Positions 15,383 through 44,039 of a DNA stretch of 64,000 nucleotides are shown here, in pieces. This DNA comes from Octopus bimaculoides (Eukaryota): NCBI RefSeq assembly GCF_001194135.2, contig NC_068985.1, forward strand, positions 13,174,151 through 13,238,150, read 5' to 3'. The number at the start of each line of letters is the position of its first letter. The stretch's first letter is position 1. The notes beneath the pieces were generated by a model. That model had not been told where the DNA came from and did not search any database. It was given only the letters and a program-made list of their open reading frames with translations. The translations under genes were made by a program, and so were the position numbers.

Positions 15383-15818
15383 AGGCGGCGAGCTGGCAGA
15401 AACGTTAGCACTCCGGGCGAAATGTTTAGAGGTGTTTCGTCTGCCGTTACATTCTGAGTTCAAATTCCACCGAGGTCGACTTTGCTTTGATCCTTTCGGG
15501 GTCTATAAATTAAGTACAGGTTTTTGCACTGGGGTCGATGTAATTGACTTAATCTCTTTGTCTGTTTTGTTTTTTTTGTCCCCTCTATGTTTAACCCCTT
15601 GTGGGCAATAAAGAAATAAGAAACGTTAGCACGCTGGGTGAAATGCTTAGCTGTATTTCGTTTGTCTTACGTTCTGAGTTCAAATTCCGCCGAGGTCGAC
15701 TTTGCTTTTCATGCTTTTGGACGTCGATAAATTAAGTGCCAGTTGTGTATTGGGTCGATCTAATCGACTGGACCCCGACCCCAAAATTTCGGTCCTTGTG
15801 CCTAGAGTAGAAAAGAAT
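15383..15818 (+). mobile_element. SINE family A dimer with 15-bp TSD
   Basis: Two tandem monomers with the junction caataaagaaataaga|aacgttagcac. TSD aatataaaactaaat at 15365-15379 and 15816-15830. Confidence 0.85.
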
Positions 15819-18409: not shown

Positions 18410-18633
18410 GTTCAGTAGTTTCATTTTTATAACGTGCTTTCACTTCTCTACCGAGCGCAGCTCTGTGCGCCTTGGGTATGTGCTGTGGTTTGCTGTGATG
18501 CTCTTATGGTTACTGTATTGAANNNNNNNNNNTAACGTGCTTTCACTTCTCTACCGAGCGCAGCTCTGTGCGCCTTGGGTATGTGCTGTGGTTTGCTGTG
18601 ATGCTCTTATGGTTACTGTATTGAAAGCTATTA

Positions 18634-18693
<60 letters not shown>

Positions 18694-19211
18694 GCATTTT
18701 CTTTCAATTCTGTTTCCATTTCTTGCCGAGTGTCTTCCTGACACTCAGGGCAGAGAAACATACTGTATACATTGGTAGGCCATTAAAACAAACACACCAG
18801 ATTGTTCATTTACAGAGTCATGTCTTAGAGTAAAAAGGGAAGACAGAGAGAAAAAGGAGAAATTAATAAAATAGAAAAGTAAACAAATAGAATAAAAGGG
18901 GGAAAAGGAAAGAAAATTCACAGAGACAATGCTCTTCTCAATACGTGTGACGTACCAGTTAAGACAATCTTTTGCACATCCTGCATGGATAGTAAGCCTG
19001 GGATCATTCTGAAATAATTTTCAATTCCATTTTTTTATCATTCCAAGAGCTCCGACAATCACTAGTATTGTAACGGTCTTGAGATTCCCCATCTTTTTGA
19101 TTTCGATTAGCAAATCCTTATTTTTTCTGAGTTTATCAAATTCTTTTACCGGGATATTATGATCACAGGGTATTCTCACGTCAATCAATAAACAGATTTT
19201 TCTTCTTTCAT

Positions 19212-19430
19212 CATTATTATTATTATTATTAGTTTGTTTTGGCTCAGGTTCGGTCTTATTCTTGGTAGGATTTATGTGGGTAGGGTATTACTACCTGTAA
19301 CTTCAGGTATCCACCAATTTCCACCTGTCTTCCAAGTGCATAGAACGCTCCTGATAATCCTTGCTGGCTCTAAGATACAAACTTTCTGTTGGAGCTCTCT
19401 TTTAGCCATTTGTCTATATCTTTATATTGA
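19212..19430 (-). mobile_element. R4/Dong LINE extreme 3' end of another subfamily
   Basis: The minus strand encodes LQQKVCILEPARIIRSVL, followed by a UTR and a (TAA)n tail at 19231-19212. Confidence 0.6.
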
Positions 19431-19445
19431 ATTATTATTATTATA

Positions 19446-19617
19446 GTTCAAGAAGTGATTTTAAATTCTCAAACGCAGGATAATGCTCATAATATAGCCT
19501 GGACAGGATACGCTACCCTATTTTGCAGAAAAAGGTGTAGGTTGTTAGCTATGATACTCAAACTCACACCTCCGTGATTACGCGTCGCGGTGCTCTGACC
19601 GATTGAGCTAAACTCTC
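19446..19617 (-). mobile_element. Candidate SINE: tRNA-Thr(CGT)-like head plus R4/Dong LINE tail plus (TAA)n
   Basis: Head TAGCTCAATCGGTCAGAGCA-CCGCGA-CGCGTAA-TCACGG-AGGT-GTGAGTTTGAGT at 19617-19551. The segment 19540-19446 aligns with few mismatches to the LINE 3' UTR at 19854-19757. Confidence 0.6.
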
Positions 19618-19756
19618 CCACTACAGATTCCTCTGCAAATTTCAGATGTATAGAAATCTCGCTTTATGAGACGCTATCATATGCTGAATTCAAATTACGA
19701 TAAACGTAAACAAACAAACGAAGTTTGCTTTTAGAAGCGCTGAGATGTCTTAGAAA

Positions 19757-19990
19757 GTTAAAGAAGTGATTTTAAATACTCAACCGCAGGATAATACTAA
19801 TAATATAGCCTGAACAGGATAAACTACCCCTATTTTGCAGAAAAAAGTGTGGGTGGCGCACAGCAGATTAGACTGTTAGAAAAAAATTCTAACATCGGGC
19901 TACCTTAGATGCCAAGAACGCTCCTGAATATCCTAGTTTTCTTCTGGAGCTGTACTAAACTGGGTTTTATCTCTATTTCCTCTATCCATT
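19757..19990 (-). mobile_element. R4/Dong LINE extreme 3' end
   Basis: The minus strand encodes IEIKPSLVQLQKKTRIFRSVLGI* (TAA at 19907-19905), a variant of the terminal LQKxxLLGTARILRxVL motif, followed by a 3' UTR. Confidence 0.65.
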
Positions 19991-19999
19991 ATTATTATT

Positions 20000-20940
20000 T
20001 TTAGTGTTGTCATTGGTTTTATTGTTCTAGTTGTTGCTGTTGTTATTTATTTTTAATCTGCATGTTTGTTACAAACACTTGTCGAGACACAGCCAGCGTC
20101 CTGGGGCGAGTGAAGGATAATATATGTTACCGTTTGACTGAAAGCTTGGGGATGGGAAGTAGCAGGGGCAGTAGCGAAATATCTTCATGTAATACAACAC
20201 AGATATTTAAATTGATGGGTTTTTTTCTAAGGATGTGAGAAATACTTGTCTGCACAATCTTTGGGATTTCTTTGAGACATGTTTCTCCTGGGATGTTATC
20301 TAGATGTTGCTAACATCGCTTTTATACCTAGGGCACCTACAACATCAGTAACATTTTTCGCTTTACGATCCCACATATTTTGTATTTCAATTTCCAGGTA
20401 CTTATATTTATTTAATTTGCCAAATACCTTTACAGATATAGTTTTTTATCAGTGGGAACACTTACATCTATTAATCTACAAGTATTTTCGTCCCTGATTA
20501 TTCTGCCCGTGCCAAGGAGGCAAAACTTTTGTAATAGTTCTACTGGGCACTCTATTCCGATCTCTTTATATTCCTGTTGATGCTTTCTGATACTGTCCCC
20601 AATGTTTGTGGACTTCAACGATTTGTATGATATTACAGATGCTATCCAAATATGTGCTACGAATGATCATAGTGTTCGCATTGTTCAAACTAACTTTATC
20701 AATGCGATTATATATTTTTTTCAAGAGGAAATGTTCGTGTTCACATTTCTACGTTTGATCAATTATCACAGGGTCCTTATATTTTTTATCTTTGTTAAAA
20801 TGTCGCAAGCTGCTTTCTTTTGTTTTTCTTTTTTCTATTTTTTTTCCTCCTTTATCATCACTAAGGCTTCTCCCACTAATATGACAGTTACCTTTGATGA
20901 TTACTATTGACGCCACATTGAAAACACAAAGAAAATGCAA
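20000..20940 (-). mobile_element. R4/Dong-clade LINE 3' fragment (RLE domain plus 3' UTR), chimeric
   Basis: The minus-strand translation gives TCRLIDVSVPTD, KYKYLEIEIQ.MW, VVGALG and an embedded IGIECPVELLQKFCLLGTGRIIR. The 3' UTR ends in an AAC/AAT-rich tail near 19990. Confidence 0.75.
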
Positions 20941-42988: not shown

Positions 42989-43646
42989 ATGACTCCAAGC
43001 AGTATGTGGATGAAGGTACTTTTCTGTAGTATCCTACTTCACCTATACGTTGCTCAATACACAAGATCTCTAGAAACACATTCCGAAGATGACAGCGAAT
43101 CCGACAAACGAAGTATTATAGATGACGATTTCAAATCACTAGATCCAACATATTATCCTTCAGGCCTAGATAAACGACAACAACAATATTCAAAATTGGG
43201 CAGAAACATTCGTGTCATTGCACGTGGAATGGATCCCATGATGTTCGGTAATCTAGGAAAACGAATGGACCCCAACATGTTTGGATCATTGGGAAAACGA
43301 TTCAACACGGACGGTAGAGAAAAGCAAGATAAGAAAATAGACCCATATATGTTTGGTAGCCTTGGAAAGAGAATGGATCCTGCAATGTTCGGATCTCTTG
43401 GGAAACGAATGGATCCAATGCTGTACGGTAGTTTAGGAAAACGCATGAGCCCCGACTACATCAACTATGCCGGTAAACGATATGATCCAGTGTTATTCGG
43501 AGGTTTAGGGAAAAGAATGGACCCCATGTTATTCGGTGGTTTAGGGAAAAAGATGGACCCCAATATGTTTGGAACCCTAGGAAAACGTATGGACTCTATG
43601 ATGTTCGGTCACCTCGGGAAAAGAGATGTATCTGGAATCAAAGTAG
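42989..43646 (+). CDS. AstA: Allatostatin-A/buccalin-type neuropeptide precursor, main coding exon (exon 42977-43646, ends in a phase-1 intron)
   Basis: Acceptor ttttttctttcctgatttatttcag|atat at 42976/7, gccATG at 42989, and a hydrophobic signal peptide (MTPSSMWMKVLFCSILLHLYVAQYTRS). An acidic spacer is followed by repeated units GMDPMMFGNL, MDPNMFGSL, IDPYMFGSL, MDPAMFGSL, MDPMLYGSL, YDPVLFGGL, MDPMLFGGL, MDPNMFGTL and MDSMMFGHL, each followed by G-KR/KK (amidation plus dibasic cleavage). Canonical donor AG|GTAAGT at 43646/7. The xDPxxFGxL-amide pattern matches molluscan buccalin/AstA peptides. Confidence 0.93.
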
Positions 43647-44039
43647 GTAAGTCAAAACATTTATTCGTTCACTTTTTACGCCTGCAACTTATCGAACACT
43701 CACTATAAGCTTTACGCAGGAACCGAAAAGATCATAAACGGGCGAAAAATATAAAACAATATATAAGTTCTGTGGGGCGGGGTGTTTTGTTTTTCGAGCG
43801 GTAAATGTCCAAGCATAATATTCGGTTTAAACCCTTTTGGATAGAAAAATGGAAGGTTATCTATAATATATCTTCGTTCGATGCGTCAAATATTCAAGCC
43901 ACCATCGAGATATATCTACGAGTGTATGCATATATATTGATAGAAAAGACAACAATAGAAAGAAAGAGACCTCGATAGTATGTAAATAGAGGAATTTATG
44001 TCACATAGTATATATATATATAGATAGATAGATATATAA

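What the first reader, a model, noticed from the sequence alone, without database searches (positions are those of the whole stretch)
19431..19617. Candidate new SINE: tRNA-Thr(CGT)-like head fused to an R4/Dong LINE 3' tail
Seen on the minus strand: a tRNA-like head with an intact D stem (GCTC/GAGC), anticodon arm CCGCGA-CGCGTAA-TCACGG (CGT followed by AA) and a degenerate T arm. A 10-nt linker follows, then about 95 nt that align closely with the 3' UTR of the R4-type ORF end at 19854-19757, then (TAA)n. Established: SINEs borrow the 3' tail of their partner LINE; the partners I know of are mostly L1, L2, CR1, RTE and I-type. Inference: a SINE mobilised by a sequence-specific RLE LINE would be unusual and should itself be microsatellite-targeted. 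Alternative: 19990-19431 is one LINE whose 3' UTR holds a tRNA-like module between direct repeats, since the upstream copy lacks a TAA tail. Only one copy is visible here.
Basis: partly seen in the sequence, partly recalled or inferred. Interest (0 to 1): 0.75.

Follow-up and report, generated by a model that had tools for sequence, protein, structure and literature searches.

The report
tRNA-like head on Dong-LINE tail
In an octopus genome window, a decayed tRNA-Thr-like sequence is joined to the last ~98 bases of a neighbouring TAA-repeat-targeting LINE plus a TAA repeat, which is how a SINE is built, but only one copy could be examined, so a mobile family and a one-off retro-copy both remain possible.

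Summary
On the minus strand, 19617-19543 is the only credible tRNA-like sequence in the window (Rfam tRNA 25.2 bits, full length, just below the gathering score; anticodon CGT). It abuts 98 nt (19542-19445) that are 89% identical to the 3' end of a 5'-truncated LINE 214 bp upstream (19854-19756), and (TAA)n follows. There is no real linker: the "linker" is the acceptor 3' strand.

The LINE is a restriction-like-endonuclease element that ends in and inserts into (TAA)n, which is Dong-type behaviour. The locus is a same-strand chain of at least five such insertion units.

The SINE reading is only partly supported. The head occurs once in 64 kb. No octopus DNA was reachable in any collection, so copy number is untested. 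Locally, the stretch from LINE-A through a 138-nt unique spacer, the tRNA-like head and the second tail copy behaves as one unit bounded by (TAA)n. No TAA lies after the first tail or before the head.

My estimates: member of a Dong-mobilised SINE family 0.45, one-off template-switch chimera 0.25, LINE 3'-UTR or composite feature 0.18, chance juxtaposition 0.07. If real, it would be a new variant of a known kind, of moderate interest.

The parts
19543..19617 (-). tRNA-Thr(CGT)-like head, 75 nt, decayed cloverleaf
   Evidence: Rfam RF00005 25.2 bits, model 1-71. ARAGORN finds it at the 90% threshold, with the structure shown. It is unique in the window.
19599..19610 (-). Box A-like TAGCTCAATCGG
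   Evidence: Read directly from the sequence. It fits TRGCNNA..GG; the consensus is from memory.
19553..19565 (-). Degenerate box B-like GAGTTTGAGTATC (C56 position is T, at a former CpG)
   Evidence: Read directly from the sequence and from the T arm.
19445..19542 (-). Tail copy 2: the last ~98 nt of the LINE 3' UTR, starting directly after the tRNA discriminator base. It contains a T5 run at 19533-19529.
   Evidence: 88.9% identity to 19854-19756, E=1.6e-31. Alignment. Coordinates.
19431..19444 (-). (TAA)n terminal repeat / target microsatellite
19618..19755 (-). 'mid': 138 nt of unique sequence between tail copy 1 and the head
   Evidence: No TAA repeat, no LINE protein similarity, no Rfam match and no other copy in the window.
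19756..19854 (-). Tail copy 1: 3' end of LINE-A's 3' UTR, not followed by (TAA)n
19905..19988 (-). LINE-A: 5'-truncated ORF remnant (27 codons, '..LVQLQKKTRIFRSVLGI*'), starting right after (TAA)4
   Evidence: Translation. Weak blastx hit to the C-terminal end of LINE proteins. 20-nt match to LINE-B's ORF end.
19988..19999 (-). (TAA)4 at the 5' boundary of the composite unit
19232..19430 (-). LINE-B: the next 5'-truncated Dong-type insertion, with a different 3' UTR, ending in (TAA)6 at 19231-19214
18694..19213 (-). LINE-C: 5'-truncated copy starting in the RLE domain ('LIDVRIPCDHNI..'), with its own 3' UTR, ending in (TAA)19 at 18693-18637

Best explanation
The segment 19617-19431 (minus strand) is a retro-copied, RNA-level fusion. 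A tRNA-Thr(CGT)-derived sequence is joined at its discriminator base to the last ~98 nt of the 3' UTR of a Dong-type LINE, and the LINE's (TAA)n follows. The LINE carries a restriction-like endonuclease and inserts into (TAA)n.

I read it as a decayed copy of a simple tRNA-derived SINE that parasitises that LINE. The proposed mechanism:
1. Pol III transcribes the element from the A and B boxes of the head (inferred).
2. The LINE's reverse transcriptase recognises the borrowed 3' UTR end in trans. This is inferred from 'stringent' 3'-end recognition in other LINEs (PMC3747384).
3. The endonuclease nicks a (TAA)n microsatellite, and the (TTA)n strand primes on the RNA's (UAA)n end (target-primed reverse transcription, inferred).
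4. The copy lands in a TAA array. This is shown only as: it lies in a chain of Dong-type insertions and is followed by (TAA)n.

The 138 nt upstream of the head and LINE-A's tail without TAA are best read as a 5' extension. After reaching the 5' end of the SINE RNA, the enzyme would have jumped to further templates, ending on a LINE RNA positioned at its UTR end.

My confidence that the head-tail junction was made at the RNA level and inserted by the LINE machinery is about 0.85. My confidence that it belongs to a multi-copy SINE family is 0.45, and that is the figure given.
For: - The tRNA model covers the head end to end, and tail homology starts at the next base. Both ends of the tRNA-like part coincide with junctions.
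- The tail is the extreme 3' end of a LINE UTR. In LINE-A it ends about 150 nt after the stop codon, within the 85-240 nt range of other UTRs of this LINE group.
- (TAA)n follows the tail, as it does after LINE-B, LINE-C, unit D and the homologous LINE in L003.
- The partner type is abundant and recently active in Octopus: 5 Dong-R4 families with 1129 recent insertions, alongside 893 unclassified recently active SINE families (PMC13282606). A full-length Dong exists in the O. bimaculoides library (PMC9115989).
- The head's decay is of the same order as the 11% divergence between the tails. I count at least 6 departures from a clean cloverleaf in 75 nt. So the head could have been a good tRNA-like promoter when it was inserted.
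- Base-rate argument (inference): a random 64-kb window is more likely to hold a member of a multi-copy family than a unique event.
- 5' extensions on full-length SINE copies have a precedent in SINEU-2, where they are attributed to template jump or 5' transduction (PMC4494074).
- Internal T runs do not disqualify it. An abundant SINE subfamily in this window has T6-8, and mollusc SINEs with T4-5 are known (PMC4758252).
Against: - There is only one copy of the head in 64 kb, whereas the window holds at least 15 copies of another SINE.
- No (TAA)n lies directly upstream of the head. Tail copy 1 lacks its (TAA)n. So 19987-19445 behaves as one insertion unit.
- The adjacent LINE fragment has the same tail family, while B, C and D have different tails. 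This suggests the two tails are linked by one event.
- Box B is degenerate, position 33 is G, and a T5 run lies 9 nt after the head. This copy is unlikely to be a source gene.
- The tail shows no conserved or unusually stable fold.
- Copy number, independence from the LINE ORF and Pol III transcription could not be tested at all.
Confidence: 0.45

Rival explanations
1. One-off chimeric retro-copy. During target-primed reverse transcription of a Dong-type LINE RNA at this (TAA)n, the enzyme copied about 98 nt of the 3' UTR and then switched to a cellular tRNA-Thr or its precursor. It then moved on to other templates ('mid', then a second LINE RNA). The product was dead on arrival and never amplified.
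For: - The structure (complete small RNA, then 5'-truncated LINE 3' end, then terminal repeat) is that of the template-switch chimeras made by L1 with U6 and other small RNAs, as cited in PMC4494074.
- End-to-end template jumping is a documented property of the related R2 enzyme (Bibillo and Eickbush 2004, cited in PMC4494074).
- The same chain holds a LINE-LINE fusion without TAA at 20493/20492. This suggests switching or nesting happens here.
- There is a single copy in the window.
- The head's decay is compatible with a genuine tRNA at the time of insertion.
Against: - It needs three switches, and the first is from an internal position of the LINE RNA.
- There is no CCA between the discriminator base and the tail. 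The donor would therefore be a precursor or a gene-like sequence, not a mature tRNA.
- A unique event is a priori unlikely to be met in a random window.
Confidence: 0.25
2. LINE feature or composite LINE copy. 19987-19445 is a single 5'-truncated insertion of a LINE variant whose 3' region holds tail box, 'mid', tRNA-like module and tail box. This could arise from an internal duplication, or from read-through (3' transduction) of a master copy into a downstream tRNA-like-plus-tail element.
For: - (TAA)n flanks the unit only at 19999-19988 and 19444-19431. None lies after tail 1 or before the head, whereas every other unit boundary in the chain has (TAA)n.
- Both tails are of the same family, while the neighbouring units have different tails.
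Against: - The 3' UTR would be about 460 nt, against 85-240 nt in the other LINEs of this group seen here.
- Tail 1 ends where a normal LINE 3' end is expected.
- The tRNA-like module has complete, exact ends, which an internal UTR module does not need.
- No second copy of 'mid' or the head exists next to any other LINE fragment in the window.
Confidence: 0.18
3. Chance juxtaposition. A tRNA-Thr pseudogene, with 'mid' as its native 5' flank, happened to lie at the edge of a (TAA)n array. A severely 5'-truncated LINE (98 nt) inserted next to it.
For: - Very short truncated LINE tails do insert in this array: unit D is about 125 nt, between two (TAA)n runs.
- 'mid' is unique sequence.
Against: - The truncation point would have to fall exactly at the tRNA discriminator base.
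- A real tRNA gene is normally followed by its own flank and terminator, not by a microsatellite.
- It does not explain why LINE-A lacks a TAA.
Confidence: 0.07

Closest known systems
tRNA-derived SINEs with a partner-LINE 3' tail (the 'stringent' type, e.g. the eel SINE/LINE pair tested experimentally; reviewed in PMC3747384)
   Same: A tRNA-like head with A/B boxes, then a tail identical in kind to the last ~100 nt of a LINE 3' UTR, then the LINE's terminal short repeat. Total length is about 170 nt.
   Different: The partner here is a Dong-type LINE with a restriction-like endonuclease that targets (TAA)n. The pairs I found in the literature are L2, CR1, RTE, I, Nimb, Vingi and Tx1. For bivalves only Nimb and CR1-Zenon were among the named partner clades I saw (PMC11481361). 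Family status is unproven here.
SINEU / Tx1-Mar in crocodilians (PMC4494074)
   Same: A SINE that shares the target preference of a sequence-specific LINE partner. Some full-length copies carry 5' extensions ascribed to template jump or 5' transduction, which is a model for 'mid'.
   Different: The heads are from U1/U2 snRNA, not tRNA. The partner has an APE-type endonuclease. The target is a DNA transposon, not a microsatellite.
EhSINE1 / EhLINE1 of Entamoeba histolytica (PMC1635306, PMC3118788)
   Same: A short non-autonomous element mobilised by a LINE that encodes a restriction-enzyme-like endonuclease.
   Different: EhLINEs/EhSINEs lack targeted insertion (PMC1635306). From memory, there is no tRNA-derived head.
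R2 SIDEs (short internally deleted elements; mentioned in PMC11481361)
   Same: Non-autonomous riders on a target-specific RLE LINE that keep its 3' end.
   Different: They arise from the LINE itself by internal deletion. They have no small-RNA head and are specific for rDNA.
Template-switch chimeric retrocopies (U6-L1 type; Buzdin 2002, cited in PMC4494074)
   Same: A complete small RNA fused at its 3' end to a 5'-truncated LINE 3' part, made in a single retrotransposition event.
   Different: Those are made by L1 and end in poly(A). Each is a unique event. Here the enzyme would be a Dong-type RT.
Dong (Bombyx mori), DongAg, DongBg (Biomphalaria glabrata): TAA-microsatellite-targeting LINEs (PMC3812793)
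   Same: The partner LINE here ends in (TAA)n and sits inside (TAA)n arrays in one orientation, also in a mollusc.
   Different: Placement of the octopus LINE in the R4/Dong clade was not tested phylogenetically. Only its architecture and target were checked.

Membership tests
tRNA-derived SINE (SINE2 type) | 5' head derived from a tRNA | tested here: met
   Rfam tRNA model matched end to end, 25.2 bits, E=0.0054. This is below the gathering score of 29, as expected for a decayed copy. ARAGORN gives Thr(cgt) at the relaxed threshold.
tRNA-derived SINE (SINE2 type) | Internal Pol III promoter (boxes A and B) intact | tested here: inconclusive
   Box A-like TAGCTCAATCGG is present. Box B is degenerate (GAGTTTGAGTATC, with T at the conserved C). 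A T5 run lies 9 nt after the head. These changes may postdate insertion.
tRNA-derived SINE (SINE2 type) | 3' tail shared with the 3' end of a partner LINE, plus the same terminal repeat | tested here: met
   98 nt at 89% identity to the 3' UTR end of LINE-A, E=1.6e-31, followed by (TAA)n.
tRNA-derived SINE (SINE2 type) | Many dispersed copies, unlinked to the LINE ORF | not testable with these tools
   One copy in 64 kb. No octopus DNA in the searchable collections: pattern scans gave 0 hits, including a control with the window's most abundant SINE. The protein routes failed.
tRNA-derived SINE (SINE2 type) | The copy begins at the head's 5' end, with target sequence directly upstream | tested here: not met
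   Upstream of the head are 138 nt of unique sequence and then a LINE tail. No (TAA)n lies between them. This holds for this copy only.
tRNA-derived SINE (SINE2 type) | Transcribed by RNA polymerase III | not testable with these tools
   No expression data were available.
Dong / R4-clade LINE (the partner) | Single ORF with RT followed by a CCHC motif and a C-terminal restriction-like endonuclease | tested here: met
   Met for the window's longer copy at 29511-30820 and for homologue P0001: RT C-terminus, 'CRICG..H....C', 'KPD..IID..D..K'. LINE-A itself keeps only 27 codons.
Dong / R4-clade LINE (the partner) | Ends in (TAA)n and inserts into (TAA)n microsatellites | tested here: met
   A same-strand chain of units separated by (TAA)n at 20640-18338. 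(AAT)19 lies before the 29.5-kb copy. L003 ends in (TAA)n. Same-orientation chains occur in L001, L002 and L004. Dong's TAA target is stated in PMC3812793.
Dong / R4-clade LINE (the partner) | Phylogenetic placement of the RT within the R4 clade | not tested
   No reference Dong/R4/Rex6 sequences were at hand. Database hits carry no clade names.
Template-switch chimeric retrocopy | Full-length small RNA joined at its 3' end to a 5'-truncated LINE 3' part | tested here: met
   The tRNA model 1-71 is followed directly by the tail homology.
Template-switch chimeric retrocopy | Unique event (junction not shared by other loci), and the small-RNA part equals a host tRNA gene | not testable with these tools
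   Needs the host genome and its tRNA gene set.

The most novel reading that the evidence does not exclude
Octopus genomes hold a family of simple tRNA-Thr-derived SINEs whose tail is the 3' end of a Dong-type LINE. Such a family would home into (TAA)n microsatellites. It would be the first described pairing of a tRNA-headed SINE with a microsatellite-specific LINE that carries a restriction-like endonuclease.
Probability: 0.4. Interest if true: 0.5.

Novelty: new variant of a known kind. Interest (0 to 1): 0.35.

Why it matters
If it is a family:
- It would extend the SINE/LINE "common tail" rule to a target-specific LINE clade with a restriction-like endonuclease.
- It would give a natural short substrate for asking which part of a Dong 3' UTR the enzyme recognises.
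- It would help classify some of the hundreds of "unclassified SINE" families reported in Octopus (PMC13282606).
- It would mean that part of octopus TAA-microsatellite growth and clustering is driven by non-autonomous riders as well as by the LINEs.

If it is a one-off chimera, it is still a natural record of template jumping by a Dong-type reverse transcriptase. That is the step thought to create new SINEs.

Either way this is an incremental result for transposon biology, not a new kind of system.

Tried and rejected
Searches for more copies (all negative):
- Self-BLAST, relaxed BLAST and nhmmer in the window found the head and 'mid' once each, and the tail twice.
- Searching a translation across 'mid', head and tail against 5.8 billion proteins found no candidates.
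- Exact look-up of 10 window ORFs found none in the collection.
- DNA pattern scans for the tail gave 0 hits in JGI metagenomes and IMG/VR.
- As a control I scanned for the conserved core of the window's most abundant SINE. It gave 0 hits in the metagenome, viral and GTDB genome collections. So octopus DNA is simply absent there, and the negatives say nothing about copy number.
- The LINE protein search returned only relatives at 73% identity or less. One comes from a jellyfish metagenome, and named hits are from corals and a sponge. None of the fetched contigs holds the head or tail.
- The buccalin-like gene identified Octopus vulgaris as a close relative at 96% identity. Its locus is not on record in the contig index, and the gene lies 23.5 kb from the element anyway.
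- A full-text search for the sequence motifs found nothing relevant.

Other checks that led nowhere:
- The whole-window Rfam scan in E-value mode was swamped by TG/TA-microsatellite 'miRNA' hits and added nothing.
- Folding of the tail and of the whole element gave z=0.1 and no covariation with two sequences, so nothing can be said about a recognition hairpin.

Ideas rejected:
- Assembly duplication as the source of the two tails: they differ at 11% of positions.
- The T5 run as a decisive argument against a SINE: abundant SINEs here and in other molluscs carry such runs (PMC4758252).
- 'mid' as LINE coding or a known RNA: no blastx or Rfam support.

Full report
**What is there**

Read on the minus strand, the region is laid out as follows:
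- (TAA)4 at 19999-19988.
- A 27-codon ORF remnant ending '..LVQLQKKTRIFRSVLGI*' at 19988-19905.
- A 3' UTR whose last 99 nt lie at 19854-19756 ('tail 1').
- 138 nt of unique sequence at 19755-19618 ('mid').
- A 75-nt tRNA-like sequence at 19617-19543.
- A second copy of the tail at 19542-19445 ('tail 2').
- (TAA)n at 19444-19431.

**The head**

- Rfam's tRNA model matches 19617-19543 end to end (model 1-71) at 25.2 bits. The gathering score is 29. E is 0.0054 when 501 nt are searched against all 4227 families and 0.026 for 2.4 kb. Rescaled by me to one family over the whole window, this is about 1.6e-4.
- ARAGORN finds nothing at default settings. At a 90% threshold it reports only this site in 64 kb, as tRNA-Thr(cgt). 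That setting yields 17 hits in 40 shuffled windows, so the Infernal score carries the statistical weight.
- The cloverleaf has a perfect D stem. It has two acceptor-stem mismatches, one anticodon-stem mismatch, G at position 33, one T-stem mismatch and a T loop of TTTGAGT.
- That is at least six departures in 75 nt. This is the same order as the 11% difference between the two tails.
- The 'linker' is the acceptor 3' strand plus discriminator. The tail homology begins at the very next base.

**The tail**

- The two tails match at 88.9% over 99 columns (E=1.6e-31; z=51 against shuffles).
- No other pair of segments in the region is related, apart from a 20-nt stretch of the ORF ends of LINE-A and LINE-B.
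- At 89% identity this is not an assembly duplicate. A near-identical duplication around the 10-N gap at 18523-18532 is one.
- Folding gives no signal: z=0.1, and no covariation is possible with two sequences.

**The LINE**

- The window holds a longer copy of a LINE of the same general type at 29511-30820(+), preceded by (AAT)19. It has the C-terminal part of an RT, a CCHC motif and a PD..D..K restriction-like endonuclease.
- Its best database relatives are 66-73% identical and carry no informative names.
- One of them (L003) shows an intact ORF end '..LLGTARILRRVLEK*', an ~85-nt UTR and then (TAA)n.
- In the window, the minus strand from about 20640 to 18338 is a head-to-tail chain of 5'-truncated copies. 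The units are E1|E2, A (with mid, head and tail 2), B, C and D. They are separated by (TAA)n arrays of 4 to 24 units.
- Units A, B, C and D show no similarity between their 3' ends.
- Loci of the same LINE group from other animals show the same one-orientation chains separated by (TAA)n. One of these loci comes from a jellyfish metagenome.
- Ending in and inserting into TAA microsatellites is the published hallmark of Dong, including in a snail (PMC3812793).
- Dong-R4 LINEs are abundant and recently active in Octopus (PMC13282606, PMC9115989).
- I did not test phylogenetic placement in the R4 clade.

**The organism**

- A buccalin/allatostatin-A-type neuropeptide ORF at 42989-43708 is 96% identical to a predicted Octopus vulgaris protein.
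- The window carries at least 15 copies of an abundant tRNA-derived SINE.
- The window therefore comes from an Octopus species close to, but not identical with, O. vulgaris.

**Is it a SINE?**

The defining test is many dispersed copies that begin at the tRNA 5' end and are unlinked to LINE coding sequence. I could not run it.
- The head and 'mid' occur once in the window, also at permissive settings.
- No octopus DNA is reachable. Tail patterns gave 0 hits. So did a control pattern from the window's most abundant SINE, in all three DNA collections.
- The protein-based routes returned nothing from Octopus with DNA attached.
- These negatives are therefore uninformative about copy number.

**What the local anatomy says**

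For an RNA-level fusion:
- Both ends of the tRNA-like part are exact junctions.
- The tail is the natural end of a LINE UTR. Tail 1 ends about 150 nt after the stop codon, within the 85-240 nt range of the other UTRs.
- The LINE's own terminal repeat follows.

Against a simple free-standing SINE insertion:
- No (TAA)n lies between tail 1 and 'mid', or between 'mid' and the head.
- Every other boundary in the chain from A to D carries (TAA)n.
- The adjacent LINE fragment has the same tail family, whereas B, C and D do not.
- So 19987-19445 most simply entered as one unit.

Three readings fit this:

(i) SINE RNA plus template jumps.
- A SINE RNA was copied to its 5' end.
- The enzyme then jumped to further templates, ending on a LINE RNA held at its UTR end.
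- 5' extensions of this sort are described for SINEU-2 and attributed to template jump or 5' transduction (PMC4494074).

(ii) One-off chimera.
- The same chain of jumps started on a LINE RNA and passed through a cellular tRNA.

(iii) LINE variant.
- The 3' region of a LINE variant contains the module between duplicated tail boxes.

A LINE-LINE fusion without TAA at 20493/20492 in the same chain shows that composite units occur here.

The degenerate box B, G33 and the T5 run 9 nt after the head make this copy a poor source gene. The changes sit partly at CpG sites and may be later decay. T runs are tolerated in an abundant SINE subfamily of this window and in other mollusc SINEs (PMC4758252).

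**Weighing**

- A random window is more likely to contain a member of a repeated family than a unique accident.
- The partner LINE type is active in a genome with hundreds of uncharacterised SINE families.
- Reading (i) needs only end-to-end jumps.
- Against that stand the single copy and the composite context.
- My estimates are: SINE family 0.45, one-off chimera 0.25, LINE or composite feature 0.18, chance juxtaposition of a tRNA pseudogene with a truncated LINE 0.07.

**Comparison with what is known**

- The build is that of a classical tRNA-derived SINE with a partner-LINE tail (PMC3747384).
- Target-specific SINEs already exist: SINEU with Tx1-Mar (PMC4494074).
- Short riders on LINEs with restriction-like endonucleases also exist: EhSINE/EhLINE, which lack targeting (PMC1635306), and R2 SIDEs.
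- I found no report of a SINE with a Dong/R4 tail. The bivalve survey names other partner clades (PMC11481361). The octopus repeat papers do not assign partners (PMC13282606, PMC8967140).
- My literature access is incomplete: Repbase and Kojima and Fujiwara 2004 were not readable.
- If real, it is a new variant of a known kind.

**Verdict**

Interest is moderate (0.35). One BLAST against an octopus assembly would settle it.

Noticed in passing
window 20640-18338, minus strand: A head-to-tail chain of at least five 5'-truncated Dong-type LINE insertion units (E1|E2, A, B, C, D) in one (TAA)n microsatellite. Arrays of 4-24 TAA units separate them, and units A-D have unrelated 3' UTRs. It is a clear example of repeated homing into one array.
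   Followed up: partly
window 20493/20492, minus strand: LINE-LINE fusion without TAA. One copy stops three codons before its ORF end ('..LLGTGRIIR'). It is joined directly to another copy that starts in the endonuclease domain ('DENTCRLIDVSVPTD..'). This is either a template switch or a nested insertion.
   Followed up: partly
window 18636-18410, minus strand: Unit D: a ~125-nt element between (TAA)19 and (TAA)24 with no ORF and no small-RNA-like head. It is either an extremely truncated LINE tail or another short non-autonomous rider. It is partly duplicated around a 10-N gap (18523-18532), which looks like an assembly artefact.
   Followed up: no
window 42989-43708, plus strand: ORF with a signal peptide and about 12 repeats of the form MDPxxFGxLGKR. 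This is a buccalin/allatostatin-A-type neuropeptide precursor. It is 96% identical to a 'Hypothetical predicted protein' of Octopus vulgaris and distantly similar to bivalve buccalin-like proteins.
   Followed up: partly
window, e.g. 39597-39443(-), 21708-21510(-), 1853-1998(+), 15655-15813(+), 31490-31342(-): An abundant tRNA-derived SINE (GGCGAGCTGGCAGAATCGTTAGCACG...GGTCGATAAATTAAGTACCAG) with at least 15 copies in 64 kb and at least three different 3' tails. The copy at 21.5-21.7 kb ends in (ATT)23 and has (ATT)n/(GTT)n upstream. Part of this family may therefore also ride a TAA-type LINE. One subfamily has an internal T6-8 run.
   Followed up: partly
window 29450-30820, plus strand: The longest Dong-type LINE copy in the window. 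It is preceded by (AAT)19 and carries the RT C-terminus, a CCHC motif and the endonuclease region, with one in-frame stop and frameshifts. Its 3' end shows no TAA run.
   Followed up: partly
L001, L002, L004 (ENA ERZ25066843); L005 (jellyfish metagenome): LINEs 66-68% identical in protein to the octopus one occur in contigs from other animals. One contig comes from a jellyfish metagenome. In L001, L002 and L004 they form the same one-orientation chains separated by (TAA)n. Several short units between TAA arrays there lack LINE coding similarity.
   Followed up: partly
window 282-409, plus strand: A 128-nt near-perfect hairpin, scored as a plant miRNA family at 60 bits (below gathering). It is most likely a MITE-like inverted repeat.
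   Followed up: no
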